Below are positions 25,378 to 64,000 of a stretch of 64,000 nt of DNA, piece by piece (within the stretch, counting starts at the first letter, position 1; every line of letters begins with the position of its first letter). Both the position numbers and the translations under genes were made by a program. A model generated the notes under the pieces. It did not search any database. It saw nothing but the letters and a program-made list of their open reading frames with translations, and was not told where the DNA came from. This DNA comes from Iphione sp. A-MEVVRFRX5 (taxonomy: Eukaryota), in assembly GCA_976226885.1 (NCBI GenBank), contig OZ320315.1, forward strand, positions 38,316,001 to 38,380,000, given 5' to 3'.

Positions 25378-25512
25378 ATGAAAAAGTCACTCACGTTAAC
25401 CGTACTTTTGGTGGCGACGGCCAGCGTCATCTTTGCGGTGGAGGCTGTTCCTAAGGGGTTCACCATCAGCTTCGATGATTCAGCGTTTTCTGTGAGCGTC
25501 AAGGACGTCGAG
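25378..25512 (+). CDS. SQase-like gene coding exon 1 (signal peptide)
   Basis: Kozak-like ccgccATG; hydrophobic leader; donor GAG|gtatgg, phase 0. An upstream acceptor (ctttcacacag, ending 25346) implies a non-coding exon further 5'. Confidence 0.85.
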
Positions 25513-27254
25513 GTATGGTATCGTCCATCATCATTATACCTTATCCGACTTCATTATTCCCCAGTCTGTCCTATTGTCTTTATACATTTACAGGCGAAAC
25601 GGATGTATCATTCGTTATCGAAGGGTTTCAGCATGAAATCCAATTCAAGCAGGATATAGTATGAGATAAATCCACACGTGTAACTGAATTCGCCGAAACA
25701 GTGTGGGGAAAAACAGTATTCGACCTGGTGTGGATGACATATTATCGTGTAAAAACCCTCATATAAACCTGAATTTTTTTTTCAGTTGTTAAAGCACAGT
25801 AGGGCGGAGCCCCTTGTTTACGTGGGCAAGGTGGAGACAGTGTTCACTGAACATCACGGTAACTGGTTCATCGAGGAGGACTCGAAGAGCAAGATTGGCC
25901 TGGTGAATTTTGAAATAGTCGACACGGAGTCGACGAGCGAGATTAAACTATGGTCCGATGATGGATACAGTGTAAGTTGATGGTGATATAGACAATGGTA
26001 AAAGTGGATTGAAACTTGTAAATCGAATGCAGCATGAAAAAATAGTCATTTTAGAAAAAGTCTCCATTCATTTCTTTAGCTTGTGGTACTAACCATTAAC
26101 CATAGGAGGTGGACGTTTCACATTTTGATGTTAACACACTCAGTGGCCACTGCGAAGGTGCAGCTTTGCGTGAAAAAGTAGGCGATTAGGGGAATAGAAT
26201 GCTTGCTGGCGACAGAATAACCACTATGTCTGAGATAAAATGTCGCTCTGAATAGGCCTACTCCGTTTTAGCATTTCAGGTCTATTACACTGAAAGAAGT
26301 GATGTTTTACATCCCGTATTAAAAAGTTCTTAACAATATGCATATGTGAATACATCAATCCTAATAATGTCGTCATAAATTTAAGTAACTGAGCGTGGTA
26401 GCAATAAACGTACTTCTGAAAAAGTTTTTTTTTAAAGAAACGTAATTTTCAGAGCTGTTATGCACCATGTCGAGTCTTTTATTCCTGGCGGCGTCTGCGC
26501 ACGCATTTTACTTATATTTAATGCCCCTGTTGACGGTTTGCTGACATTTTGGCCTTGTCAGGTGGACTTGGAGCTGAGTTCGCATGACTTCAATCCCCTC
26601 ATCTTGCACTGGTCGGAGCTGGGGGCCGGACCTGACCGGCTCTGGCTGCGCTTGCCTGCTGCGAGCGACGAGCGCGTGTACGGCGCCGGGGAGCAGTACT
26701 CCCGGCTTGATCTACGCGGCCATCAGTACCCGGTCTGGACACGCGAGCAAGGTGTGTGCTAGGACGCCATTTGTTGCCCGCTTCCTCCCCCCTCAGCCAA
26801 GGGCCGGCAGCCTTGTCCTTCGTGTGCCTATACATAATTATGTATCTGTCTATATTTTTCAGTGGCAGTATATGGACTTATACCTATCTGACTTCTCATT
26901 TCCCTTGTCTTGTTAGTGCTTCTTCATCTTTTATTTTTTCTGCTGATGTTTCAGTGTAATGTACTATTAGAGGTGACGCCAGACTTACCATTAAGTTCAT
27001 TCACTCAGGGAGCATTAGAATGTCATGACTCACATGAAGAAACGTAATAAACTATCTAATCTACGATAATCATAATGTACAGCGTCTGTCCGATCGGGAA
27101 GGCAATTATGTGATTTGATTAAATTAATGGATGGTGCCTGCTGGAGTTCTTCACGATTAAGATCTAAATCGCACCATAGTGAATGTGACCGTCCAGCTAT
27201 CCACATCTGCCATATGAAGGGCTTTCACTATATCATATGTTACAGGGAAAGCGA

Positions 27255-27294
<40 letters not shown>

Positions 27295-30200
27295 GTTCCC
27301 CTTTATTTGCTTCTTCTCATAGTATATTGAAGACAATAAATCTACATTAGTACTTCTCTAAGGCCAATTTTATTTTATTTTTGGCCAAAAGGCCAATTTT
27401 AGCTGTCCTCCTTAATGGACGTATTATCCGTGATGACAGGCAACGTAAATGGAATTGAAACTGTGTATAAATATTGTAGGAACCTGTTTAAATTACCAGG
27501 TAGGCGACCCACCTGATATTACAATCGAGATGCAATGGACAATTACATTATACATGTATTATCAACCTCGGGGGACCCGGTCAAGCGAGAGTCCGCAATT
27601 GGCTGGACCTGGTGTCGTTTGCGGGCTTCTGCTGTAGTTGACCCGATTATGTCAAAGTGACAGAGCATGTGAAGTTTTCTCCACAGTTTCTCGTCTATTG
27701 TCCAGGTGTTGGAAGGAACAAGTCGTATCCGGTGACGTTGCTCATGGACACGTTCGGTCGGGCCGGTGGCGACTACCATACGTCATACTTCCCGCTGCCC
27801 ACGTTCGTCTCCTCCAGACGCTACTACTGCCACCTAGCGGGATCTAACTTCATCAATCTCGATTTCCGTCATCCGGGATATCACGAGATCTCTATCCACG
27901 GACCGCCAGAAGATATTTACTACAACGTCCAGCCCAGCTTTGAAAAACTGATCCGTGCGCTGACCTACTTCCTGTGGCGTCAGCCCGAGCTGCCCAGCTG
28001 GCTGCACACGGGCGCCATCTTAGGGGTTCAAGGAGGCACCAAAAGGGTCCGAATCCATCTCAACTTTCTTATTTATGCTTCTTTTGTGGCAACACCATTT
28101 CAAAACGCATATTTGCGCGTCTGCTTTACTTTGTTGGGCTCATGGCTGCAGAGGCACGAGAGAATTTGGACATAAGACTACGAGTGAGAATAACTCCACT
28201 ACGCGAGAAGAAATATATTAATTTCCCATTTTAATTGCTGTCACCGGAGGCTCTAATTGGATGACATTTATTCCATATAAAAAAAGAGAGGCGACGCCAC
28301 TGCTAGAATTATTTCAAGTCTGTCCTTCAAATGATATTTACGGAAGTCCATGCAGCGAGCACAGATTGCCGAGCCGATTCAATTTTTGCAAATTTAATTT
28401 GTCAAAGTTACATTGTTATGATCACGTCGTTTTTTTTTGCTCGTAGATGCTGGAATACTACAGGGAAGCGAGGGATGCAGGCGTTCAAGTGAGTGGTCTG
28501 TGGATACAGGATTGGTCCGGCAATATCTACACTGACTTTGGCAAGCGGGTATACTGGGACTGGGTGTGGAACAAGGAACACTATCCTGGTAAGAATAAAA
28601 CTCCATTCACAGGTGGTCTTGCATGGTATATCTCCGTCGGAAGTGCTCGCGCAAAATCGATTGACTATCCACACAAGATATAACCCCTCTAAAGGAATTA
28701 GGTTTTGGTTTCTTTTCAGTTGTTTCTTCATACATTAATCTCAAGAGTGGCCTACTTTTACTTACACGACATATTCTTCTCATGTCCGTGGCAGTACGAA
28801 TGGGTGGGGAATATGGTAAAGGAGCCGTAGCGTCAACGATTGTTAAACTGACCTACGTCCCAGGTGCAGGACATGTCGATATGATGAAATGAAACCATTA
28901 TATGTAATATATCTTATGGTGACTAAATGTAACTTATATTTACCAAATACCTGGCTTCGTGCCTCTTGCTTCCATATGAGTAGATGATACCAATATTGAC
29001 TGCATGGTACGGTGTCCTGTCATGGCGCCAGGCCATATTGCATGTAAGAAATACCATGCTATCTGCTTCAAAGCGGACGGTTTTGTTAATTTATCAAGTT
29101 GATTTTAATCACAATGGTTTCTTTAAATTTGTGTGATTCAAAGAGTTCGTTAAATTCGTTATGTTTTCCGGTTAAGGAATCTCCGAAAGGGGGGGAACCC
29201 TCTTGTATCATGCACGAAACACAAATTAATTAGGCTTTTTCTTTCCTTCCATACGCTTCACTGCAGTGTAACCTTCATTCACGTAGCATTCGTTGCATCT
29301 GCGTATTGCCCTATATTTACGAGCGGACCAATGTAATATCCAGTTGCTTTTTCCCCTCACGTGACATTCAATTCAGAACTAGATCGTGAAATTAAACGGC
29401 TTAAGGAGGAAGGAGTACGCGTGTTAGCCTACATCACTCCTAATCTGCACAGCGAAGGGACACTCTTTCAAGAGGCGGAGAGAAAAGGCTACTTCCTTAA
29501 GACCAGGGAAGGGAAAACATATCTACAAGATTTTATGCAGTTCTACTGTGGTACGGTTGACCTTACAAATCCAGAAGCATTCAACTGGTATAAAGGTAAG
29601 AAAGAGGAGAGGTAGGTTATAACATTTTCGTATTTTACTTTGACGGGGTAACGACCTCAATGATCTCACGTAGAAAGTCAATACGCAAATGGTTTCAGCC
29701 TGAAGGGTGGCCTGTGTCTATGGCTGACCATTTCATCTCAATATTCCGGCTTGTCATGCGGCGGTGTCGGCAGGGGTGCCATGTAAGCTACTCGTATATT
29801 ATGGCGGGTGATGATCGAGGTTCGCCGGCTGACGAACCCGACCGCTTCTTTTCACCTTATTGCGTTGGCGCCTGATGTACGTCTGACACGCGCCCGTGCC
29901 TTCTGCCCCAGGCGTGGTGACGAACAACCTCATAGGCCTGGGCCTGGGTGGCTGGATGGCTGACTTCTCCGAGTACACGCCTGTCGACGCCATCTTCCAC
30001 GACGGAACCGACGGCCGACTGATGCACAACCGTTTCCCGGTGCTGTGGGCGCGACTGAACCGGGAGGCCGTGGCCGAGGCGGGCAAGCTGGGCGAGATCA
30101 TGTTCTTTATGAGAGCTGGGGGCACAGGTGAGTCAGGCACGAGAATGCATTACATCGATGGGCGAGATGGGATTTCCTCTCATTTGTACCCCTCCGAGTG

Positions 30201-33200
30201 ATTGTGAATGTAGGCTTCCGGCACATTCGTGTAGGTACCTCATCTGGTCAGCACCACATTTATTATATTTGCATAGTGTCCACAGGGCTGCAGTTCCATA
30301 TAGATAAGGTGCCCTTATCCTTAAGAGCCTACAATCTGAAACTATACACAGACCCATATAATGTAAAAGTGACGAGAGCGTTACAGTACAGAGAAAAAGG
30401 GGAAATAAATCCGCTCTACATGTATAAATGACTAATTCCACCAATAGATGTACCAGCGGTATTCTCCAGAACTATTAAAAACTACAGGAAGAAGACATTT
30501 TATAGTGGTAGAAACTGTTATAGCTTCCTCATTTTCCTAGACCAAGGCATAGCGAAAAAGATGTAAATTTTCAATTGGAATTTGATTTACACCACAAAAA
30601 CACCATCCCGGAGAATACATTTTGGTACATCTATTGGTGGAATCAGTCAGATGTATATTCAACATTTCAAGGTGGTTTAATCATTAAACGCCAAATACAT
30701 GCATACTCATGGATTCAGATGAGTTTCGCACAACTCAGAATGTCTGCCAAATGAACAAACATAATATATAAAGCTGCAAATGATAAAAGAACATAAGTAA
30801 ATGTCAACACTGTGCCTCTTATAACAAACATATCCGTATAGCGAAGGATGTAATGAAGCGGCAAACAACCATGGGAGCCTTTTGCAAAAGGTCGGACAAA
30901 TACGTACTTTCAATATCCATTTACAGTCACCCGCCCTCCCACGAGAGGCTTCAGGTTGCGCAGGAATTGATTAAAATGTTATATTGCCACATTCTCAGTG
31001 AAGATCGTGCCCGGCATTTTGCCCCCCCCTTCTAAGTCCTTTGAACAATTCGTAGTACTTTGTCGCAGTACTTGATTCGGTGTGCAACGGATTCAGTCAA
31101 AGGCAATACGCATCAATCGCTGTCGCGTACTGAATCACACAGTAAAGGCATTTATTGCCTTCATGGAAGCACACGTGGATGTGTGGACGCATCCTCATGA
31201 GTGATATCGTAGAAACTTAGCCATTCTTTCGGTCGAAATAACTGTTACTAAACCGATATTTTTCTGATGCATCGTTTTTTAACCAAATAAAACGCACCGA
31301 ACGCACTATATTGATTTTCCTTATTACTCAGCGAATCTCAACAGTAAATCTTTTTGCAACATTGACTTTTTGAGAGGAGGTAGAGACTACCCTGTTCTGT
31401 AAACAAGAAAGCAAAAGGTACAGTAGCAACTCACCTAGTTGGCAATACAGCTGGGAGGGCAACTCTAAATATGAGGCAAGTTTGGCTGGTCCTTAAAGCA
31501 TATTTTCTGAAACCAATTTAGGTAGCAAATCAGTCATAATTGAGGACAGATTTGTCCTGTTCCATTGGTGGTCGTAATTCTTAGTTCATACTGTATTCCC
31601 ACATGTGATGCTCCACACGCGAGTCAGCAATGAAACTGCTTCCTTTGGGAATATTAAAAAAAAAAGTTCCAACCCATTAAAAAAGAGAATATTTTATGGG
31701 GTCCGTAGGTTCCCAGCGGTTCACGACGATGACCTGGGCAGGCGACCAGAACGTCGACTGGAGCTACTCCGATGGGCTCGCCACCGTTATTCCCGCCGCC
31801 CTGTCGCTCGGCCTCAGTGGCGTAGGACTAACCCACTTCGACATCGGCCTCTACACGACCATGGTGAAGACCGCCAGCTTGCCGCCCGTCTCCGTCGAGC
31901 TGAATATGACCCGCTCGGAGGAGCTGCTCCTACGGTCGGCCGAACTCGCCGTCTTTACCGCCATCATGCGGACGCACGAGGGTAAGAAGAGCCACCCGCC
32001 CGCCAAAGAGAATTCTGCTCCCTGCTTGCGACCTTAATTCCATCAGAGAAATGCTAATCTTATCAACTTGCGGCTCTGACCGTGTTTCTTCCTTTCTGAG
32101 TTTTCTGCTCCTAAACCGGCCGGCAGACCAATGACGGTCGAAGAGCCCCCATTTTGTATATCTTGCCCACGTACTTATTATGTGCCATTTGTTTCGATAC
32201 GTTTTTTTTTTCTCTGAGAATACCTTTGCAACGAATTAAAGTTCCCAAGTGTCTTCGATAGTTGTCTAATTGGTAATGGCATACCATTTTCACGTGGGGT
32301 GGCTTCCCTCACGCAAACTGTTGATGGGCACGCTAGGGATGTGCCATAAATAACATCTCTCAGAATGATAATGCTTTTTGACAATAGTGGCGCTGTCATC
32401 GGCAGATATCACTGCATCGATTTTAGGATTATCGCATTGAACGACTACTGGTTAAAAGTTGATTGTCTGAAAAATTAAATCAGATAACCACAGGGCAAGT
32501 CATTTATATTCCTTTTATTATCGCTATGCTCTAATGGGCACCCAAAACGACTTCTCATGGTACAATTAGCGTTATCAGACGTTGGCGAGAGGCTTTGAAA
32601 TTGTCGTCTGCACGTTCTCGCAGCTTGTTACCACTGTACGGATATTTGATTAGTCTGCTGTGAGGTTCCTCACAATTAAATCGATTTCCCGTCTTTCTTG
32701 CTCTCACTTGAAACCTTTAGGCAACCAGCCTCAACGGAATTGGCAGCTTAACTCTAGTCCAGAGACACTGAATAGGTTTGCCACACTGACGCGCACATTC
32801 CGCCACCTCGCCGCGTATAGGAGAAGTGTAGAGAAGGAACAGTTTCGGTAAGACCATGAGCATCTGTCACCACTGCCATATATATACATACATATTGGCT
32901 GCCGGATTCAGTTAGTCCCTCAGTGATAAACCTGCAGCACGTGTGGGCTGGAAAAAATGATTTGTTAGTGAAAGTAACCTAGGGCAAGAGTGCAGTCTTC
33001 AATTCAAATCCTACCAACGTCGGTCCCTGTATGATGTTTGGATCAAGTGCCAATAGAAGAGGTCTATGTATGGCCACGAATCGCGCTAGTAGATTGTTCG
33101 TTGACAAATTGGCCTCTTCTGGGTCTCCCCAGTTCTTGGAAAATGCCGAACAGTGATTTGGTGTTTAAAAAGCAAGGTCTAACTCATTATCACCCAAGGA

Positions 33201-34006
33201 CCCTTGGGGATAGTAATTGCGCGTTAACAAATTCCAGGGTGAAAATAATTGTTAAGCACATTCAAACACGTTTTTTTTCTGGACAACAGTATTAACTGGA
33301 AGTCTGCCTTTTTGTGTGTAATTTCATTCTAATCCGCTCAGTATTAATAAGCTTTCCTGTGACCGCAGCAGAGAAAACCACACATTTTCAAAAGTTCCTC
33401 TTGTAATGACAAAACAACAATTCCTCCATTATTTTTTCTCGTCTCGCTTCCCGACGTAACACAGGTTCAGCTCACCGCCTTTAAAATAACGACGTTCCCC
33501 ATAATATGCACTTACTGAGCGGTGAACTGATGGTCTGTTTATCACCTATTCTACATATCCATAATACTTCCAGCGGCGGCTTACCGATGCAAAGGCCTCT
33601 TTTCCTTCACTACGAAGAGGACCCGAAGACATTCTCCGTGGAGTACCAGTACATGTTTGGTAGGGACCTACTGGTGGCTCCAGTTATCGAACCAGGAGTT
33701 GAGCGTTGGAAGGTGTACCTTCCCCCCGACGCATGGGAGCACCTCTTCCATGGAACTCTACACGACGGGCCTACTTGGGTGACCGTCGACGCTCCGATTG
33801 GCTGTCCTCCCGTCTTCTTTAGGAGGGACAGTAAATGGAGGGACACCTTTATACAAGTCAGACACCCAGAGGGTTTTGATTTTGATGGGCAAGCGGTTGA
33901 CACCTCGGAGGCTGTCAATTTGGAGGCGCTCCCTGTCGGACAGGTCAAGTCTAATATACAAACTGATCAAGCTCACTGTGATGGAGTGTCAGATGATTGC
34001 CATTAG
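25378..34006 (+). CDS. yihQ: Secreted GH31 sulfoquinovosidase-like alpha-glycosidase (YihQ homolog), 10 coding exons, 753 aa
   Basis: Exons 25378-25512, 25786-25971, 26562-26751, 27706-28046, 28447-28588, 29377-29595, 29912-30127, 31709-31981, 32721-32847 and 33574-34006 join through GT-AG introns with matching phases (0,0,1,0,1,1,1,1,2) into 2262 nt = 753 aa + TAG. Motifs GEQYS..DLRG, EQGVGRNK, LGVQGG, WIQDW, FGKRVYW, GWMADF (nucleophile), WAGDQNVDW (acid/base), DIGLYTT, MRTHEGN and GLPMQRPLFLHY match E. coli YihQ as recalled. N-terminal signal peptide MKKSLTLTVLLVATASVIFAVEA. The symbol denotes the bacterial homolog, not an assigned animal name. Confidence 0.93.
25786..25971 (+). CDS. SQase-like gene exon 2
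   Basis: Acceptor ttttttttcag; LLKHSRAEPLVYVG..HGNWFIEE parallels YihQ LILTHSKDNPCLWIG..RGNFSIKD; donor AGT|gtaagt. Confidence 0.85.
26562..26751 (+). CDS. SQase-like gene exon 3
   Basis: Acceptor ccttgtcag; DRLWLRLPAASDERVYGAGEQYSRLDLRG..WTREQ; donor G|gtgtgt, phase 1. Confidence 0.92.
27255..27293. repeat. (AAT)13 microsatellite in SQase intron 3
   Basis: Perfect AAT run seen directly. Confidence 0.95.
27706..28046 (+). CDS. SQase-like gene exon 4
   Basis: Acceptor attgtccag; GVGRNK..GGDYHTSYFPLPTFVSSRRYYCH..RQPELPSWL..LGVQGGTKR. The donor AGG|gtccga is weak, but it gives exact colinearity with exon 5. Confidence 0.9.
28447..28588 (+). CDS. SQase-like gene exon 5
   Basis: Acceptor ttttgctcgtag; AGVQVSGLWIQDWSG..FGKRVYWDWVWNKEHYP; donor G|gtaaga. 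Confidence 0.93.
29377..29595 (+). CDS. SQase-like gene exon 6
   Basis: Acceptor caattcag; LDREIKRLKEEGVRVLAYITP..VDLTNPEAFNWYK; donor G|gtaaga. Confidence 0.93.
29912..30127 (+). CDS. SQase-like gene exon 7 (catalytic nucleophile)
   Basis: Acceptor ttctgccccag; GGWMADFSEY..MHNRFPVLWARLN..GKLGEIMFFMRAG; donor G|gtgagt. Confidence 0.94.
30429..30649. mobile_element. MITE-like element with about 39-bp TIRs in SQase intron 7
   Basis: tgactaattccaccaatagatgtaccagcggtattctcc versus the reverse complement of ggagaatacattttggtacatctattggtggaatcagtca; atgtata occurs on both flanks (possible TSD). Confidence 0.7.
31421..31593. mobile_element. Tc1/mariner-type MITE (family B) in SQase intron 7
   Basis: TA-CAGTAGCAACTCA ... 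ttagttcataCTG-TA; colinear with 46724-46903. Confidence 0.75.
31709..31981 (+). CDS. SQase-like gene exon 8 (acid/base Asp)
   Basis: Acceptor gtccgtag; SQRFTTMTWAGDQNVDWS..DGL..DIGLYTT..MRTHE; donor G|gtaaga. Confidence 0.94.
32721..32847 (+). CDS. SQase-like gene exon 9
   Basis: Acceptor acctttag; NQPQRNWQLNSSPETLNRFA parallels YihQ NRPGDNWQFDGDAETIAHFA; donor CG|gtaaga, phase 2. Confidence 0.9.
33574..34006 (+). CDS. SQase-like gene exon 10 (terminal)
   Basis: Acceptor tacttccag; GLPMQRPLFLHY..YQYMFGRDLLVAPV..VYLP..APIGCPPVF; TAG at 34004-34006. Confidence 0.92.
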
Positions 34007-36046
34007 CCATCTTTTCCCACTTGTATTTCGTTAAGTCAACACTTACCTTTCGATTGACCCATCGCTCACCACTGACCTTGGCGTTTATTTGTAAAGGTAT
34101 AACGAGTCTGATGTCTTTGGTGCATATTACAAAAAAACCTTCAAATATCTATGATTCCTTCGATCCGCTTTATTACTAATGGTATAAAAAGGGCCTTTAA
34201 ATTGCTCAAAAATGGGGATTTCATGTGTAATATATAGACATCTGTATTCCTCTTTTCCCTCGTGTCGGACTTTTTCAGGGAAAGTTATGTAAAGTATTGT
34301 TGGGATCGAAGACTTCATCGTCAAATCAGTTATTTCAGACTGATTAGAGCCAGAGAGACTGGAATGAAGTGTTTATACGAGAATCATTCAATCATTGAGG
34401 ATATATGTTCTGTATGTGTCGCTTAGATCGTCTTGCACACAAGATATGTTGTAAAAAGTATGAATGTTTGGATGTTAAGTAGACAATTCGCAGTAAAGAG
34501 TTGTTGAGACACAATTAGTTCCATTGTAAATTTGATGAGTGTATGCAAATCGAAATTCCACAACGCTGACAATTAAACTACAGGTTGTTCGTATAATTTA
34601 TTCTAAAATAACTTGAAAAGAACATTACGCGTATATTTATATTAGAATGAACGAGTCATTTTCACATTGTTACTCTAGCACAATAATTAAAATATATATG
34701 CCAAATATACTTACATTAAATGTCTTGTTTGCAAAGAAAAACGGGTGACCATTTCATTGATCTAAATTAATGTCATGATAAATGGAACTTCCTCAAGTTC
34801 TTTTTAAGTATGAGCTCCAAATCCCATCGGAATAGCGGTTATAGCCATCATTTCTACGATTACCTGAAGTCTCAGACCAATTATTAAGTTATGTTCAAAA
34901 ATACATCCATCCCTGTGACAATTTGGTCCACCCTCAGGCACTCGTGCCTTTACCTGAATTGAATTGAAACGGTTGTCAAGCTTGTCGATTCCACACCACA
35001 TGTTTCTAACATCGCTTAGATAAAATATACTTCTTGTCTAATTTTTGACTGTCTTACTCCGTTGTGTGTATTTCAAGGACAATTAAAAGTTGCTTGAGGA
35101 GTATGAATCGGGTCTTCTCTGAATAAATGAATCAATTAACAACATCCACAATACCATGAATACCTCCTCATATACATGAATACCACTTGTCCGTTCACTA
35201 AAAAAAAAAATCATCCAAATGATCTACACCGAGGAGTCATGTGCCCTGTCGATTGCTTGCGTTAGTATTCATCTAATATCCAAGTAAACGTATTACATGA
35301 GATGTATAGCACCATCTATCGAGAAGCACGATATTTACAACCTACGCGGAAAGGAGGTTACCGTATACGATATATGAATTCCACCATTGGAACACCACTG
35401 TCACGTCATGTTCAGCCCCCGGGACAGAGGACACATTTCCACACTTTACATTGCTCTATTTACTCGAGTCATGAACGGCACATTCAATTACCAATTGAGA
35501 TTCCTGATACATCAAATTGGAGCTGCAGTCAGCATAAGCGGTCAATGGACACATTTATAAAAGAACATGTCTCGAAGGGCAAGCCGCCCTCCATATTTGG
35601 GCATGCTTTCATTTTACAACCGACCATACGCCACTCATGCCATCGGATGATGGGGCTTTTCATAAAACTGATGGCCCTAAATGCAGCCTTTAAGATTGCA
35701 GGGCACACATTAAAGCGCGGTGTTCTCATTAATGACATGGACATTTTATTCAATGCCGGAGAAACTGTAGGCCATATTGTGAACGTCGGAGGAGAAGGGA
35801 CCGCCAGCTGTTTATACCACCTGTCGGTACAACAAGACACCACACCCCTCGTCCCCCTCTTGCTATACCTTCTGGACTGTTTATAGGCGTTCAGCTAAGC
35901 TGGGGGTTTTAGCCGATAGCCTGAGGGGTTTGCTTCCAAGAGGTGGGTGGAGAACAGCAGACCCAACAGTGGACTGTGCGAATTAATGTCCCACTCGATC
36001 CAGAGAAACTGTCGGTAGACACTGCCCCGAATTCATACCTCCCTTG

Positions 36047-43100: not shown

Positions 43101-46100
43101 TTTACCTCTACCTGTGTCTGCCTTTACTACTTTTCTCATTCTTACCATGTACTTGGACTAAATGAATGCGTGGAATTACTAAAGGGGGCGGATCAATTAA
43201 CTTCATGTTATCCATGATAACAATCAGTTCGGTGGCTATCATCACTCTGGATAATGCATCTGGTTATACACGGGGCAAAGTAACAAACGCCAAACGACTC
43301 ATTTAAAGTGAAAGGTCTCGTAGGTGATAACCTTACCATGATGAGCAGTGTCCGATCAAGTCGCACGAGCTTCCAGGCGGTGAGACCAATATGCTCTGTC
43401 GTCACTCGGTTCAAAAACACCTGTAAAGTTGAAAGAAAAAACAATGCTCCGGCGTTAAGAGTTTAGATAACGATTGAAAACGATTTTATACCGTCCATAA
43501 CTTTACATAGTGATTGTGAAGACCGTGTCTGTGCAAGGCATATCGGATTTCCAAGTAAGTACAAATAAAAGAGAGCTGGAATAGATAAGACCCACGTATA
43601 TATGAAAGTTATCTAAATTAAAGCTTCTCGTAGCAGGTAAACAACTTTAAATCCTTTTTTTTAAATTTTCGTACTAAAGAGCATCTGTACACAAGCTTGT
43701 ATAAGCGTCATTTTGACCATACTCCTCATGTATTGCGTACACGGATGAGCTTGGAAGAAACACAGTGTCAAGTGTCGGCTGCATAGGGTGTAAATGATAG
43801 AAAACAGACCATCGGTTTTTTTATGCTACTGTATTAAGAGTGTCTCAAAGCACTGCACGCTGCTTCACAGAAGACCTCAGAGACTAGTTGTCTGGCCCCA
43901 CGTTAGTTGACCTCCCAGGCACTGCTGTCATAAAGATTTAAGATGTTCAAAAGATGTTTGAAGCCTTCTTTATTCTTTTCCCAACCATACCTAAGGCCTC
44001 CAAAAATGTTGGTGTTTCTGGTAACGGATTAAAAAATACAGGGCCTGTAGACAGGTTAAAACAGCAGTATATTAATCATTAAAGGACATACTATACCTCA
44101 TTTTCTTCTTTGCAGGCTTACCTTTCATATAATCTCAGCATCAAAATTAGACAATTAAAAGGAACGTCCCATTAGGACAAAATTGAGGTTCAGGTTACCG
44201 TTTTTTGGCCTATTTTCTTAGGCCTGAACAGTAATTACAGTGACTACAGAGCAGACCACTCTTTAGAAGTCCAAGTCCAAGAAACGATATATTTTTGTGG
44301 TTCTTTGCAGCATTATCACACGTCTTGATTAGATATGATGCAGCCTTCAGAACGTAAACCAACATCACGTTTCCCTATGAGATATTTATGTGTATTTACT
44401 TTTGGACGGATTCATCTAGTATTGAATATTGCAGACTATTGCCATCGTGGTTGGGTTAAGAAAAGGCCATGTATCAGTTATATATCTGGAGCGAATTTCG
44501 GACTATGGATAAGAGTTTTTTTAACAGAGCTACTGAGATGACGACGAAATCTCTGACCGAATCAAAGTTCAAATGAAACGTCGTTTCAAACTGAATTACC
44601 TGGACGGAGATTCCCTCTTGCGTAGTACAGGATCTGAGGTCAACATCGTGTATGATTGCTTTTGGTACTTTGCCCTGTATAAAGCAATGTTACAAAGGAT
44701 AACAGTACTAAATCTTCTCCGAAACGCAAGCCTTTATGACAGTGTAGTATTCGTTTCTCTCTTAACGCGTTAAGGATGTGCATTACCTCTAAAAAAAGCA
44801 GTCAACTTACGCACGAACGAAAGACGAACAGAGAGTGGTTTTCAATTCTTTCCTACTTCCAGACAGTAACCTAAGCATCTGGACATGAAGTAAGTTAAGA
44901 GTTGCAAGTTATGTATAGGCTACCGCTTAAGGCTACTGCACATTTACGTTACAGTATGAGAGGCTGTAGGAAAGGAGACTGCAGATCGAGCTGGCGGCGG
45001 TCGGTAAACCTACTGATGTACACCCTGATGTAAAAACAGCCTATATATTGGGCTCACTATTCAATATTTTGATAGAATCCAGACTTACCTGCAAATATTC
45101 TTAGTATTATTATTTCTAAGAAAATAATGTTGTCTGTTACGTTATCTAAAAAAAATTAGAAATCATCTTATTTTACAAATAATATAAAATAATTATGACT
45201 TAAATTATTAGCTCACCGTGTAAATATTAGGTCGTGGTCATTTGAAAGGACAAGTTATAGATTCAGTCATAATCTGTCTATATCTGTTACTCGTAACTTC
45301 AGACAACAATCTCTACTGTGCACTGCATAGTGCGTGGATGAAGAGAGTTTAAATATACTGCCCTACTCATCTGAGGATTATCAAAATGAGTGAAATTTGC
45401 ACATCCACTGGACAGTATTGAACATCGAGATGAAACTAATGCGTACTGGAAGGCTAGGCTCCAGCGTGAAGAACATGTAAAACGTATGGCTTACCGCTGC
45501 GCAGAGGGAGGCCCCGGCCACCGTGACGCTGACGACGTGTGTGAGAGCAATCACAAAAAATACCACGCTCGCCGTCAGTGCCAGCACGTCCTGGGCGAAC
45601 AGATCCTCGTTCTTCACGAGGACAAATATGAAGGCACAAATGGTGGGAATATCAAACAGGTAAGTCAACAGGTTGAAGAGTGAGAACATATCGTCGAGCG
45701 TGTCGGTGACTTTACACAGCAGCAGATGGCGCTGGCGGTGGCCCTCAATGTCGGTCGAGCCGCCGTACTGCGGGCGCCCCCGTACGTCGGGGGTTATCAC
45801 CGTTGCCCGGAAGCCGGAGGAGAACTCCTGGAATTCCTTCTTGAGCAGTACACAGATGATGACGAGCACAATATTGGGCTGGATCCAGCAGAAGGCCATG
45901 TAGTAGTGACAAGTGAAGTAGATGGCTGCCACCCACACGGGCACGGCGCCGTCGATACTGAACGGCACCAAGAAGATGCGAGTTAGCGAGGGCAGCTTGA
46001 TGCTGAAGAGAGCGATACCCACCACGGCGAAGGAAAGTATCATGACGTTGATGGACATGACGACGCGGCAGGCAAAACCCTTGAGTTTGTCGGTAGGCAC

Positions 46101-46658
46101 GCCGCCGTACCTGTCCTTGTAGGCCTGCCAGAGGGCGATGAAGGTGGCCGAGTGCTTGTGGCTGACCACGATGAAGACGGTGACGCTGAGCGCACACTGC
46201 AGGTTCCAGATGTGGATGACGATCTTCATGAAGAGGCGCGTCCCGTGCGAGTCGGGCTCGACGTAGGCGGCGAAGTAGCGCAGCGCATTGAACCAGAGCA
46301 GGCAGAGGACAACAGCGCAGTAGAGCGTGCACACCTGCACCGCCCGCCCCTCCGGGTCGCGTAGTACGAGCCCGTAGCACTTGAGGCTAATGGAGAGCGG
46401 GCGGATCACCTGCGCCACGCTGGTGTCACCCTCCTCCGGCTCATCCTCGGGCTCCTCCCGACCATCCAGCGCCGAGTGGGAGCCGTGTTCCGAGCAGCTC
46501 CGGTCGGACGGCTCGTGAGTCGGTCGGCGCTGGGCCAGCAGCGGGGTGCCCTGAGGCGGGAGGGGCGTGCTCGCCGGGATCGGGCCCGACCCCACCTGGA
46601 TGCGGTGCACCACTTTGCCGTTGACGTTGACGTACGTGTGGCGTGTTGTCATCTTCAT
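36988..46658 (-). CDS. Grl: Gustatory-receptor-like (GRL, 7tm_7 / 7TM ion channel) protein, 4 coding exons, about 485 aa
   Basis: Exons (minus strand) 46658-45495, 44674-44600, 43420-43337 and 37122-36988 join through three phase-0 GT-AG introns. Multiple hydrophobic helices. The C-terminus reads ..VQVFLNRVTTEHIGLTAWKLVRLDRTLLIMVFGLILSYVVVLFKF, matching the GR/GRL S7 signature TYhhhhhQF. One long exon followed by three short 3' exons is the known family architecture. The start codon is inferred. Confidence 0.82.
43337..43420 (-). CDS. GRL exon 3 (VFLNRVTTEHIGLTAWKLVRLDRTLLIM)
   Basis: Acceptor ttcaactttacag, donor ATG|gtaagg; 84 nt; FL.R....IGL motif typical of GRL S7a. Confidence 0.85.
43995..44224. 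mobile_element. MITE related to family A, in GRL intron 2
   Basis: Left end TAA-GGCCtccaaaaatgttggtgtttctggtaac; the right end (gttacc..ggcc) is degenerate. Confidence 0.5.
44600..44674 (-). CDS. GRL exon 2 (GKVPKAIIHDVDLRSCTTQEGISVQ)
   Basis: Acceptor ttgctttatacag, donor CAG|gtaatt; 75 nt, phase 0/0, no stops. Confidence 0.75.
45495..46658 (-). CDS. GRL long coding exon (388 aa, TM1-TM6)
   Basis: Part of ORF 45381..46754; GC-rich coding composition; IRPLSISLKCYGL before TM1; strong donor GCG|gtaagc at 45494. ORF portions below 45495 are intronic read-through. Confidence 0.88.
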
Positions 46659-46723
46659 CGGCTCAAAGATAAGTGACCAGCCAGTAGCAAGAGACGCGTT
46701 CCTCTCGAACCGAGATACACATA

Positions 46724-46903
46724 CAGTGGGCAACTCACCTTGTGAGCAATTCAACTAGGAGGACAACTCAGGATTGAGGGCAAGTTTGGTTGGTCCCCAT
46801 GGTTTATTTTCTATGACATAATTAATTCAGTTAGGAGGGCAAGTTCCAGTTAAGGTAAACTTTGTCTGGTCCCATTGATGGTTTTAATTCTGAGTTGCTA
46901 CTG
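46724..46903. mobile_element. Tc1/mariner-type MITE (family B) 65 bp upstream of the GRL ATG
   Basis: TA-CAGTgggcaactca ... tgagttgctaCTG-TA; TA target duplication at 46722-23 and 46904-05. Confidence 0.8.
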
Positions 46904-61254: not shown

Positions 61255-64000
61255 AATAATAATAATAATAATAATAATGTGTTTATTAACCAAATCTCCA
61301 CATACAGGCGCAAAGTTCTCCTTGGTTAATGAAGGAACAACAAGAAAAGCAATTACACACAGGTCATACAGTGGACAACACATATACAAACAGAGGACAA
61401 CACATGTACAGATCGACATTACATATATAGGTACAAATTGACGGTGTAAGACATATATTACATACTAGTGAAGCAGATCTACAGGCAGCTTAGTATTGAA
61501 GACATGTAGCAAAAGTAGCATTATACACGATTAAGTCAGATACAGTGAGTCAAAACATGCACGTGCAAATAGGCTGGGTGTCTAGTAGCAGCGGCAAAAA
61601 AGGAGATACACTACAGAACATGCGACACGGATTATGAGAATAACACACACGGAAGATCAAATATGCCAGAATTATACACATACGACAAAACAGCAGAGAA
61701 GGAAGGCAGCAGATACCTATTCCCAAGTTGGCAATCATGCACTTAGTAAGGATACACAGGAGCAATAAGCCATATAATGCGCGGTACGCTGATATCAGGT
61801 TATCAGACGTCCATGCGTGAGAGTAGCATAGGCTATGTGGAATACCATACCCGTCAGTCGGAGAACTGTCCTAGTCATAGAGACGACTACAAATGTAACA
61901 TGGATATTCCTATGATGAGCAGGCGTTGCCCATGAGCAGCAAGTTAATAGGAAAGCTCCTCGGTGAATACCTAGCCCGATTATACAAGAAATACAAAAAC
62001 TCTCATACATCGGCTCAGTTGCAGAAAATCCAGCCAAATGCTGGGTTAGCTCCTTCGGACGAGTCCACGGAAGCTAGCCTTGGTCCTGCATCTAGCTTCT
62101 TTGGGTAGGGAATTCCACTGAGAAGCAGCACCAAAGCGCAGAGTGCGCATGTACTGGCGACTCTTAGCCCTTGGAATGAAGATGCGAAGGCCAATCCCTT
62201 CCCTAGTCTTCGATTTCTTAGCCATGGGTAGTAACTCCAAGTGTGCCTGGTTGTGGATTGCCTTCAGGGCCCTCAGTTCTACAAGCTCCACTATTCTGGC
62301 AATACCGTAACGTTCAGCTAACAATCTAGCTGATTGGTACTTGTTCCCCTGAATCGCCACCCGGATGCATCGGTTCAGGTGTACCTGGAGCCGGTTGAGT
62401 ACACCACCAGTGCAGGGGTACAGGATAGCAGCCACATAGAAAACCTGTGGCAAGACCAGGGTTTTGAATAGACGAACTCTCAATTGCAACGGGAAGAATG
62501 ACTTAACACGACCCAATTTCAATGAGGCAGACCACATCCTACACTTAACCTGGGCTATTAGCTCCTTGAGTTGCAACTTAGCATCCACCAAGAAGCCAAG
62601 CAAGTTCAGTTTGGCTTCTAGCTTTAGAGGCGAGCCACCAATGGTCAAGTCGAGCGGGACATTCGAGGCATTGCCCATGACCATGTAGCCACACTTTCCC
62701 ACGCTTAACAGCAGACCCACTTCATTACACCAAGTGACCACTTGATCAATGGTGTGCTGTGCATTTTGCCGGAGGCGGAGGAGATCAGGAGCCCGCACCA
62801 CAATGCTCAGATCGTCAGCGTAAAGGATTGGTTCACTGACGTCCGGGAGCCGGCCCGCCACCTCATCAACAACCAGGGCGAAGGCGCTCGGTCCGAAGAC
62901 CGAGCCTTGTGGCACGCCGTGGACCACCTGACGGAGCGAGGAACACTCACCCCCACACCTCACAAACTGCTTCCGGTTGACAAAATAGCTCGAGATCAAC
63001 TTCCGGAGCAGCCAGGAAGCACCCGCTTCTTCTAGTCTGCGCAACACAACCGCCGATGGGACAAGGTCGAAGGCCTTTTTTAAATCAAAGGCCAACACAC
63101 AGCAATATTGACTCGAGTTGAGCACATCAGAGACACGGTTTATCAGGCACACAATGGCTGTCTCCGTACTCCGACCGGCTCGAAAGCCATGCTGGGCACT
63201 ACCTATGAAGTGTCTGTCAGACAGTGTCTTCACTAGATTCGCTACCATCCAAGATTCAAAGATCTTACCAGGCAGTGGTAAGATCGATACTGGACGGTAG
63301 TTGCCCAGCTGATCACGGTTCCCCTTCTTGAAGACGGGCGTCACGCGAGCGACCTTCCATCCATCCGGGTATAGTCCCCTCAGGATGATGTGGCGGAACA
63401 GGTTGGCAAGGAAATCAACATTCAGTAGAAGCAATGGTTTCAAGATGGAGGTTGGGACGTCATCAATGCCCGAGGATTTACGGACATTGACCTTGTTGAT
63501 GTACGGACGAAGCTGGATAGGAGTAGGCACTGGAAGGTCAAAAGGATCACGCCCCGCCGCTGCGACCCATTGGTTTGGTAGCTGGTTCTTAGCTAGCTTG
63601 CTAACTTCATCGATGAAGTAACTGTTGAAAAGGTCCGGTAGTGAAGTGCCTCCCACCTGTTGATCATCCAGCTGCGACACATCGGGTAACACTGGCACCG
63701 ACTTACTCCGACCCAAGGCATCATTTAGGACACCCCATAGTTTGCTGGAGTCACCACCAGCACTCTTGATTTTGCGAGCCCAAAAGAGCTTTCGGGCAAG
63801 TCTGGTTGCCTTTCTCACTTCCCCATTTAGAAATTTAAAAATCCTCTTCGCATCCTCACAGTTGTTGGACTTCCATTTACGAAAGTAGTACTGTCTGTCC
63901 GCTATTAGCTCGACAGTTCCTGGATCCAACTGGACCCCATGCTCATAGGTTCTACTCTTTCGAGTTACTATGCGCACCTTACTGTCAAGACCCTGCTTGA
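61255..64000 (-). mobile_element. CR1/L2-type non-LTR retrotransposon, 3' part, 5' end beyond the window
   Basis: Uninterrupted RT ORF (62046-63977, open to the edge), about 790 nt of 3' UTR, AATAAA (61287-61282), then an (ATT)8 tail at 61278-61255. Confidence 0.9.
62046..64000 (-). CDS. LINE ORF2 reverse transcriptase (partial, at least 650 aa, no stops)
   Basis: WKVARVTPVFKKG..NYRPVSIL, QHGFRAGRST, FDLKKAFDLV, GVPQGSVFGP, LYADD and C-terminal QWNSLP motifs. The frame stays open from 63977 to the window end (KQGLDSKVRIV). Confidence 0.95.
   Translation of the reverse strand, partial: KQGLDSKVRIVTRKSRTYEHGVQLDPGTVELIADRQYYFRKWKSNNCEDAKRIFKFLNGEVRKATRLARKLFWARKIKSAGGDSSKLWGVLNDALGRSKSVPVLPDVSQLDDQQVGGTSLPDLFNSYFIDEVSKLAKNQLPNQWVAAAGRDPFDLPVPTPIQLRPYINKVNVRKSSGIDDVPTSILKPLLLLNVDFLANLFRHIILRGLYPDGWKVARVTPVFKKGNRDQLGNYRPVSILPLPGKIFESWMVANLVKTLSDRHFIGSAQHGFRAGRSTETAIVCLINRVSDVLNSSQYCCVLAFDLKKAFDLVPSAVVLRRLEEAGASWLLRKLISSYFVNRKQFVRCGGECSSLRQVVHGVPQGSVFGPSAFALVVDEVAGRLPDVSEPILYADDLSIVVRAPDLLRLRQNAQHTIDQVVTWCNEVGLLLSVGKCGYMVMGNASNVPLDLTIGGSPLKLEAKLNLLGFLVDAKLQLKELIAQVKCRMWSASLKLGRVKSFFPLQLRVRLFKTLVLPQVFYVAAILYPCTGGVLNRLQVHLNRCIRVAIQGNKYQSARLLAERYGIARIVELVELRALKAIHNQAHLELLPMAKKSKTREGIGLRIFIPRAKSRQYMRTLRFGAASQWNSLPKEARCRTKASFRGLVRRS

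What the first reader, a model, noticed from the sequence alone, without database searches (positions are those of the whole stretch)
25378..34006. Animal-encoded, secreted sulfoquinovosidase candidate with the complete QQRWY sulfonate-recognition set
Seen in sequence: the spliced 753-aa product has Q279 (28029), Q305 (28507), R318 (28546), W321 (28555), Y525 (31852), nucleophile D422 (29962) and acid/base D489 (31744), plus a classical signal peptide. Established knowledge (recalled): E. coli YihQ uses Q262/Q288/R301/W304/Y508 for sulfoquinovoside specificity and D405/D472 for catalysis. All seven residues here sit at a constant +17 offset. SQases release sulfoquinovose from the algal/plant sulfolipid SQDG, and this chemistry is usually attributed to bacteria. 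Inference: the animal may secrete its own enzyme (gut lumen or lysosome) to cleave dietary SQDG/SQ-glycerol. That would give the host a first step in sulfosugar turnover, possibly feeding gut sulfoglycolytic microbes. Eukaryotic sequence homologs may already be noted in surveys, so the novelty is mainly functional.
Basis: partly seen in the sequence, partly recalled or inferred. Interest (0 to 1): 0.85.

Follow-up and report, generated by a model that had tools for sequence, protein, structure and literature searches.

The report
Animal sulfoquinovosidase gene, already described kind
This invertebrate genome carries an intact, intron-containing gene for a secreted enzyme that very probably cuts the sulfur sugar off algal and plant sulfolipids, but a 2026 preprint already describes such animal genes and database annotation already names them, so this is one more member and not a discovery.

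Summary

- **Similarity to YihQ:** the protein is 46% identical to E. coli YihQ over 679 aa. Q279, Q305, R318, W321, D422, D489 and Y525, plus H566, align with the YihQ residues.
- **Family constraint:** it keeps 98 of 103 near-invariant family positions.
- **Origin:** it lies inside a strongly supported animal clade that is sister to bacterial sulfoquinovosidases. Eight of its nine introns match the limpet Lottia gene in position and phase. It is therefore an old animal gene, not contamination or recent transfer.
- **Targeting:** it has an N-terminal signal peptide and no C-terminal anchor.

The idea is not new. A February 2026 preprint (10.64898/2026.02.11.705467) reports such genes in 65 animal species, with signal peptides, gut expression and the same hypothesis. 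NCBI already names dozens of animal proteins "sulfoquinovosidase-like".

No RNA data or structure model could be obtained, and I found no enzyme assay for any animal member. This scan's notes hold no earlier sulfoquinovosidase finding.

Local oddities are an unusually long loop after Y525 and G524L. The closest relative gene, in another assembly, has lost the key residues yet keeps an open frame.

The parts
25378..34006 (+). Whole coding span of the sulfoquinovosidase-like gene (10 exons, 753 aa, stop at 34004-34006)
   Evidence: Gene model built. The only copy in the window by tblastn.
25378..25512 (+). Exon 1. Residues 1-23 (25378-25446) form the predicted signal peptide: MKK, hydrophobic core, VEA.
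   Evidence: Animal homologues and the relative gene in L003 also start with a hydrophobic leader.
25786..25971 (+). Exon 2 (N-terminal beta-sandwich)
   Evidence: The intron before it is shared with Lottia at the same phase.
26562..26751 (+). Exon 3 (GH31 N-terminal domain, ends in the TREQG motif)
   Evidence: Pfam PF13802; NF007746 profile positions 94-154.
27706..28046 (+). Exon 4, holds Q279 (28029-28031). Its donor is the weak GTCCGA.
   Evidence: The junction needs no gap against YihQ. The same exon ends are seen in genomic ORF fragments P0001-P0003 and P0006.
28447..28588 (+). Exon 5, holds Q305 (28507-28509), R318 (28546-28548) and W321 (28555-28557)
29377..29595 (+). Exon 6 (TIM barrel)
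   Evidence: Pfam PF01055.
29912..30127 (+). Exon 7, holds the catalytic nucleophile D422 (29962-29964) in WMADF
31709..31981 (+). Exon 8, holds the acid/base D489 (31744-31746) in WAGDQ, L524 (31849-31851), Y525 (31852-31854) and H566 (31975-31977)
   Evidence: In the PDB search at E up to 0.001 this exon matched six chain sequences: E. coli YihQ/sulfoquinovosidase entries, chains deposited as alpha-glucosidase yihQ (5ohs, 5ohy), and 8r56 and 6pnr, deposited only as GH31 or alpha-glucosidase.
31870..31905 (+). 12-aa insertion (about residues 531-542) in the loop just after the sulfonate-binding Tyr. With it the loop is 21 aa, against 9 in bacteria and deuterostomes and 10-16 in other protostomes.
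   Evidence: It is in-frame coding sequence and too short (36 nt) to be an intron.
32721..32847 (+). Exon 9
32848..33573 (+). Intron 9, specific to this lineage. It is absent from Lottia and from the relatives L003, L004 and L005, and present at the same spot in the relative L008.
33574..34006 (+). Exon 10: GH31 C-terminal domain plus a 47-aa acidic tail with no hydrophobic end, so no GPI or transmembrane signal is seen
   Evidence: Pfam PF21365; hydropathy.

Best explanation
This is a functional, vertically inherited animal gene for a retaining GH31 sulfoquinovosidase of the YihQ type.

- **Targeting (inferred).** The protein enters the secretory pathway through a cleaved signal peptide. Having no membrane anchor, it ends up soluble in the gut lumen or in lysosomes.
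- **Chemistry (inferred from homology).** It hydrolyses the alpha-glycosidic bond of sulfoquinovosyl glycerol or sulfoquinovosyl diacylglycerol from eaten algae, cyanobacteria or plant detritus. D422 attacks C1 and D489 acts as acid/base. R318, W321 and Y525 hold the sulfonate, and Q305, Q279 and H566 hold the sugar hydroxyls.
- **Fate of the product (speculative).** No downstream sulfoglycolysis gene lies in the window. Released sulfoquinovose is therefore probably left to associated bacteria or excreted.

The gene structure, residues, clade and constraint are shown here. Secretion, substrate and physiological role are inferred.
For: - 46% identity to E. coli YihQ over 679 aa, with all seven motif residues plus H566 aligned.
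- 98 of 103 positions that are at least 95% conserved in 49 reference sequences are kept; the references themselves keep 94-103.
- All eight exons scanned hit NF007746, the YihQ equivalog, collinearly. The summed score is about 647 bits against a cut-off of 553.
- Exon 8 alone matched six PDB chain sequences at E up to 0.001, led by E. coli YihQ/sulfoquinovosidase entries; the others are deposited as alpha-glucosidase yihQ (5ohs, 5ohy) or only as GH31/alpha-glucosidase (8r56, 6pnr).
- In the careful ML tree the animal sequences are monophyletic (100/99), sister to the bacterial group that includes YihQ, and the window protein is inside the animal clade.
- Eight of eight Lottia introns match the window's in position and phase.
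- dN/dS is about 0.08 on exon 10 against the closest relative, though dS is saturated.
- Signal peptide present, no hydrophobic C-terminus.
- Published tissue data for orthologues in clams, Aplysia and amphioxus show expression in digestive organs (10.64898/2026.02.11.705467).
Against: - No transcript evidence for this gene: no RNA run was listed.
- I found no biochemical assay of any animal member. The preprint text holds neither 'recombinant' nor 'enzymatic assay'.
- Gly524, next to the sulfonate-binding Tyr, is replaced by Leu, and the following loop is the longest seen at 21 aa. Either could alter the pocket or the aglycone site.
- The sister gene in a related assembly (L003) has lost the acid/base and the Q/R/W/Y residues. 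The function is therefore dispensable or changeable in this lineage.
- The shared stem branch of the two genes is long, at 0.49.
Confidence: 0.75

Rival explanations
1. It is an active GH31 glycosidase whose specificity has drifted away from sulfoquinovosides. It might prefer another 6-substituted or neutral alpha-glucoside, or a different aglycone, because of G524L and the 12-aa loop insertion beside Tyr525.
For: - G524 is conserved in at least 95% of the reference sequences and is Leu here.
- The loop after Y525 is 21 aa, against 9-16 elsewhere.
- Four more near-invariant positions differ: T197S, G261W, N352T and W668F.
- The stem branch is long.
Against: - All eight substrate and catalytic residues are intact.
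- Leu at the 524 position also occurs in the oyster Saccostrea protein, and the loop length already varies from 10 to 16 aa among protostome proteins that keep the full motif.
- The terminal branch is of ordinary length, 0.26.
Confidence: 0.1
2. The gene is silent or on its way to decay, like its sister gene in L003. The intact motif would then be a leftover with no present function.
For: - No RNA run could be listed.
- The closest relative gene has lost D489, Q279, Q305, R318, W321 and Y525.
- The intron 4 donor is weak, GTCCGA.
Against: - The 753-codon frame is open across 10 exons with consistent splice phases.
- 98 of 103 invariant positions are kept, against 78 of 101 scorable positions in L003.
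- The terminal branch is three times shorter than that of L003.
- dN/dS is well below 1.
Confidence: 0.07
3. The sequence is bacterial contamination of the assembly, or a recent bacterial transfer into the animal.
For: Identity to E. coli YihQ (46%) is about as high as to most animal homologues (45-51%).
Against: - Nine GT-AG introns, eight of them shared in position and phase with Lottia.
- The protein is nested in a monophyletic animal clade (100/99).
- G+C content is like the flanks.
- The neighbours are an animal chemoreceptor gene and retroelements.
Confidence: 0.01

Closest known systems
Animal sulfoquinovosidase homologues (Uchida et al., bioRxiv 10.64898/2026.02.11.705467; RefSeq 'sulfoquinovosidase-like' proteins of Patella, Lottia, Mytilus, Lingula, Glandiceps, Asterias, Branchiostoma, decapods and others)
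   Same: - Same clade and the same seven residues.
- A single GH31 barrel with a signal peptide.
- The same proposed role, digestion of dietary sulfolipid.
- The same eight introns as the Lottia gene.
- Like the preprint's annelid, brachiopod, bryozoan and giant-clam proteins, no GPI signal.
   Different: - At most 51% identical to any named animal protein.
- Longest loop after the sulfonate-binding Tyr, and G524L.
- One extra intron.
- The source genome is not in the protein databases searched.
- If the source is an annelid other than Owenia, as other agents' unverified notes suggest, it widens the preprint's annelid record.
E. coli YihQ (PDB 5AED/5AEE), the founding GH31 sulfoquinovosidase, EC 3.2.1.199
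   Same: 46% identity over 679 aa, the same three-domain layout, the Q/Q/R/W/Y motif, the Asp-Asp dyad and His537.
   Different: - YihQ is cytosolic, has no signal peptide, and sits in the yih sulfoglycolysis operon.
- The animal gene has introns, a leader peptide and a 47-aa acidic tail.
- It has HFDIG where bacteria have HSDIG, a 12-aa loop insertion, and no sulfoglycolysis neighbours.
Agrobacterium SmoI/AtSQase (PDB 5OHS/5OHY)
   Same: Same family and fold. Hit by exon 8.
   Different: It uses the alternative Lys/Glu pair in place of Gln262/Gln288. The window protein has the Gln/Gln form.
NAD+-dependent sulfoquinovosidases (SqgA type; PMC10755693, PMC12780224)
   Same: Same reaction outcome, release of sulfoquinovose. 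They are also found in eukaryotes (algae).
   Different: An unrelated family with a redox-assisted mechanism. The window protein shows no resemblance to it and uses the classical retaining Asp-Asp mechanism.

Membership tests
GH31 sulfoquinovosidase (YihQ/SmoI type) | GH31 three-domain architecture: N-terminal beta-sandwich, (beta/alpha)8 barrel, C-terminal beta-domain | tested here: met
   Pfam PF13802, PF01055 (two exons) and PF21365 on the exon translations.
GH31 sulfoquinovosidase (YihQ/SmoI type) | Catalytic nucleophile Asp (WMADF) and acid/base Asp (WAGDQ) | tested here: met
   D422 and D489 align with YihQ D405 and D472.
GH31 sulfoquinovosidase (YihQ/SmoI type) | Sulfonate-recognition residues Arg301, Trp304 and Tyr508 (the Q/E-RWY motif, as cited in PMC12780224) | tested here: met
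   R318, W321 and Y525. The neighbouring Gly is Leu here.
GH31 sulfoquinovosidase (YihQ/SmoI type) | Gln288 with Gln262 (or the Glu/Lys alternative), and His537 | tested here: met
   Q305, Q279 and H566.
GH31 sulfoquinovosidase (YihQ/SmoI type) | Scores as a YihQ equivalog and not as another GH31 subfamily | tested here: met
   NF007746 is the best hit for all eight exons scanned, collinear over profile positions 94-678. The summed score is about 647 bits against a cut-off of 553. In the tree it lies inside the SQase group, apart from the Q-for-R outgroup.
GH31 sulfoquinovosidase (YihQ/SmoI type) | Hydrolyses sulfoquinovosides (pNP-SQ, SQ-glycerol, SQDG) and not alpha-glucosides | not testable with these tools
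   Needs expression and assay. I found none reported for any animal member.
Animal SQase clade (Uchida et al. 2026 preprint) | Groups with animal sequences and not with bacteria | tested here: met
   Animal clade supported 100/99, with the window protein inside it. Quick trees agree.
Animal SQase clade (Uchida et al. 2026 preprint) | N-terminal signal peptide and a single PF01055 barrel | tested here: met
   Hydropathy and n/h/c layout only, with no SignalP available. Domain hits.
Animal SQase clade (Uchida et al. 2026 preprint) | Expression in digestive tissue | tested here: inconclusive
   The look-up of sequencing runs listed no RNA run for this stretch, so read laying could not be used.

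The most novel reading that the evidence does not exclude
The window gene and its sister in L003 form a distinct, fast-stemmed subclade of secreted animal sulfoquinovosidases with an enlarged loop beside the sulfonate-binding Tyr.

- The window copy would be an enzyme with a remodelled aglycone site, for instance better suited to intact diacyl sulfolipid.
- The sister copy has a signal peptide and open exons. It carries the same D-to-N acid/base change as the PDB chain 5aee_A. It would have become a secreted, catalytically dead sulfosugar-binding protein, not a pseudogene.
Probability: 0.2. Interest if true: 0.45.

Novelty: new member of a known kind. Interest (0 to 1): 0.3.

Why it matters
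[quoted passage not shown] Animal-encoded enzymes would put grazers and filter feeders at the first step of that cycle. That idea is already published as a preprint and is built into RefSeq names, so this locus does not open the question.

What this locus adds:

- One more lineage, possibly a second annelid lineage.
- Intron evidence that the gene is old in spiralian animals.
- A natural pair of an intact and a catalytically disabled copy, which could be useful once someone performs the still-missing biochemical assays.

Tried and rejected
- **RNA evidence.** The look-up of sequencing runs listed no run, so read laying was never used and splice junctions rest on homology and GT-AG only.
- **Structure prediction.** Not done. 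The position of the insertion in the loop after barrel strand 7 is inferred from the alignment only.
- **The window's own protein in the databases.** Not found.
- **Naming the organism.** The neighbouring chemoreceptor ORF returned only unnamed ENA and Logan relatives. 'Annelid-like' comes from other agents' notes and was not checked.
- **ESM Atlas with exon 4.** It gave only generic GH31 fragments.
- **Other searches of the window.** Rfam gave nothing. E. coli YihO, P, R, S, T, U and V gave no hit at E up to 0.01. The first AATAAA on the + strand downstream of the stop codon is at 35122, which is not informative.
- **Synteny between L003 and the window** beyond the gene itself: none detectable.
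- **Speciale et al. 2016.** Not held in the library. Its content is cited only through the preprint and PMC12780224.
- **Contamination or recent transfer.** Considered and rejected on intron and tree evidence.
- **A hidden intron explaining the 12-aa insertion.** Rejected: it is 36 nt and in frame.
Full report
**Observation**

The window has no N runs, and its G+C content is even (about 0.44) across the gene and its flanks. I rebuilt the gene from open frames and frame-preserving GT/AG pairs. The result is ten exons that splice into a 2262-nt frame of 753 codons. All introns are GT-AG; only the intron 4 donor (GTCCGA at 28047) is weak. tblastn of the product against the whole window finds this copy alone.

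**Comparison with YihQ**

I took E. coli K-12 yihQ from the annotated RefSeq record instead of relying on memory. There it is named sulfoquinovosidase and sits in the yihO-yihV sulfoglycolysis cluster.

- BLASTP gives 46% identity over 679 aa (632 bits) with two gaps (13 gap positions in all), one of them the 12-aa insertion.
- Q279, Q305, R318, W321, D422, D489 and Y525 pair with Q262, Q288, R301, W304, D405, D472 and Y508.
- H566 pairs with H537.
- One gap is a 12-aa insertion just after Y525; the other is a single position near the C-terminus.
- Exon 8 alone, searched against all PDB chains at E up to 0.001, matched six chain sequences. The best are E. coli YihQ/sulfoquinovosidase entries (5aed, 5aee). 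The others are chains deposited as alpha-glucosidase yihQ (5ohy, 5ohs), plus 8r56 and 6pnr, which are deposited only as GH31 or alpha-glucosidase.
- Pfam finds the three GH31 domains.
- NCBI's YihQ equivalog model NF007746 is the top hit of all eight exons scanned. The hits are collinear over profile positions 94-678, and the summed score of about 647 bits exceeds the 553-bit cut-off.

**Targeting signals**

The N-terminus has a basic start, a 17-residue hydrophobic core and VEA before the likely cleavage site. The strongest hydrophobic window of the whole protein lies there. The C-terminal 47 residues are acidic with no hydrophobic end. There are three N-glycosylation sequons. The protein therefore looks soluble and routed through the secretory pathway. 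Whether it ends in the gut lumen or in lysosomes cannot be told from sequence.

**An animal gene, not contamination**

A HMMER search of 1.8 billion representatives with exon 4, followed by a profile search, returned dozens of full-length animal proteins. They come from gastropods, bivalves, a brachiopod, a bryozoan, echinoderms, hemichordates, amphioxus, crustaceans, springtails and one fly, and most are already named 'sulfoquinovosidase-like' by NCBI. The best identity to the window protein is 51%, to the hemichordate Glandiceps.

A careful ML tree (LG+C20, 40 rows) has these features:

- The animal sequences are monophyletic (100/99).
- They are sister to a bacterial group that contains YihQ (99/92).
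- The window protein lies in the protostome part.
- It groups with arthropods at 95/91. I do not take this as taxonomic evidence, because its stem branch is long.

Intron mapping strengthens the case. All eight introns of the Lottia gigantea gene coincide in alignment position and phase with the window's first eight introns. Amphioxus shares one. Genomic ORF fragments from other animals end at the same exon 4 borders. The ninth intron (32848-33573) is specific to this lineage. It is missing in L003, L004, L005 and Lottia, and present in the relative L008.

**Constraint**

Across 49 reference sequences, 103 alignment columns are at least 95% conserved. The window protein keeps 98 of them; the references themselves keep 94-103. 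The five departures are T197S, G261W, N352T, G524L and W668F.

On exon 10, dN/dS against the nearest relative is about 0.08. dS is saturated, so this holds only qualitatively.

**Local peculiarities**

- The loop after the sulfonate-binding Tyr is 21 residues here. It is 9 in all bacteria and deuterostomes sampled and 10-16 in other protostomes.
- Leu at position 524 replaces a nearly invariant Gly, but the oyster Saccostrea protein has the same Leu.

These features are unusual in degree, not in kind. They sit where the barrel loop following strand 7 would face the active site, which I infer from the alignment because no model could be made.

**The closest relative gene**

The exon 10 search led to related genomic contigs in unnamed ENA and Logan assemblies.

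- **L004 and L005** carry a canonical gene with all residues and a short loop.
- **L003** carries the true sister of the window gene (100/100). It has a signal peptide, matching introns and no stop codon in about 660 aligned codons.
- **What L003 has lost.** It has lost Q279 (now T), Q305 (P), R318 (H), W321 (R), D489 (N) and Y525. It keeps only 78 of the 101 invariant positions that could be scored. Its terminal branch is three times longer than the window's (0.76 against 0.26).
- **The D-to-N change.** The PDB chain 5aee_A differs from 5aed_A at this same position, reading WAGNQ where 5aed_A reads WAGDQ.
- **Interpretation.** This looks like a secreted pseudo-enzyme and not a decaying pseudogene, but that is inference. 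It also shows that the activity is not indispensable in this lineage.

**What is already known**

The bioRxiv preprint 10.64898/2026.02.11.705467 (February 2026) reports 'animal SQase' in 65 species of nine phyla.

- The seven residues are conserved, and most of the proteins have signal peptides.
- GPI anchors are predicted in many molluscs but not in annelids, brachiopods, bryozoans or giant clams.
- Expression is in digestive organs in clams, Aplysia and amphioxus.
- It found no downstream catabolic genes in Tridacna crocea, the one genome it searched.
- It proposes the same model, host digestion of dietary sulfolipid feeding associated bacteria.
- Its text contains none of 'intron', 'exon', 'recombinant' or 'enzymatic assay'.

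A 2020 survey of molluscan glycoside hydrolases already lists sulfoquinovosidase among GH31 members (PMC7560691). The preprint states that Speciale et al. 2016 had noted animal homologues. This scan's own notes contain no earlier sulfoquinovosidase finding.

**Context and limits**

- The window holds no homologue of E. coli YihO, P, R, S, T, U or V and no Rfam match.
- The neighbours are a 7tm_7 chemoreceptor gene and a reverse-transcriptase ORF.
Other agents' notes call it annelid-like or mollusc-type. I could not verify this. If it is an annelid other than Owenia, it extends the preprint's annelid record.
- No RNA run was listed, so expression is untested.
- No structure could be predicted, because the spliced protein has no reference accepted by the tools.

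**Verdict**

The kind of gene and the hypothesis are already described, so this is a new member of a known kind with modest local peculiarities.

Noticed in passing
L003:4240-10405 (ENA ERZ26222911, contig ctg1020123_32x_l): This is the sister gene of the window's sulfoquinovosidase in a related, unnamed assembly. It has a signal peptide, the same introns and no stop codon. It has lost the acid/base (WAGNQ), Q279, Q305, R318, W321 and Y525, and the TREQGVGRN motif. It is a candidate secreted pseudo-enzyme.
   Followed up: partly
L010:1-7366 (ENA ERZ25042269, contig ctg6758l): A bacterial contig with a sulfoglycolysis-type cluster: TRAP transporter DctM/DctP, a GH31 sulfoquinovosidase split into three ORFs, class II aldolase, TauE exporter and aldose epimerase. 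The split ORFs and paired aldolase fragments look like long-read frameshift errors.
   Followed up: no
P0181 (Bradysia coprophila): A fungus-gnat protein named 'sulfoquinovosidase-like' groups with springtail proteins (100/100). It keeps the motif except for Y525F. The 2026 preprint states that none was detected in Insecta.
   Followed up: partly
P0182 and P0186 (Babylonia, Nucella second copies): Neogastropods have a second paralogue in which the motif has changed (Q279T with Q305E; Q305M with R318K). This is another case of a duplicated animal copy leaving the canonical residue set.
   Followed up: no
L007 (Branchiostoma floridae gene) against the window: Of the six introns I could map in the amphioxus gene, only one coincides with a window or Lottia intron position, while the limpet shares all eight of its introns with the window. 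Intron positions have turned over strongly in one of the two lines.
   Followed up: partly
window 45381-46754 (-): A 457-aa open exon of a 7tm_7 (gustatory/chemosensory receptor) gene. The closest database relatives are 73-82% identical, unnamed ENA and Logan proteins.
   Followed up: partly
window 62046-63977 (-): A 643-aa open frame with a reverse-transcriptase domain (RVT_1, 97 bits), presumably a non-LTR retroelement running to the window edge.
   Followed up: no
window about 27250-27300, inside intron 3: A trinucleotide microsatellite that reads as poly-Ile, poly-Asn or poly-Tyr in different frames.
   Followed up: no
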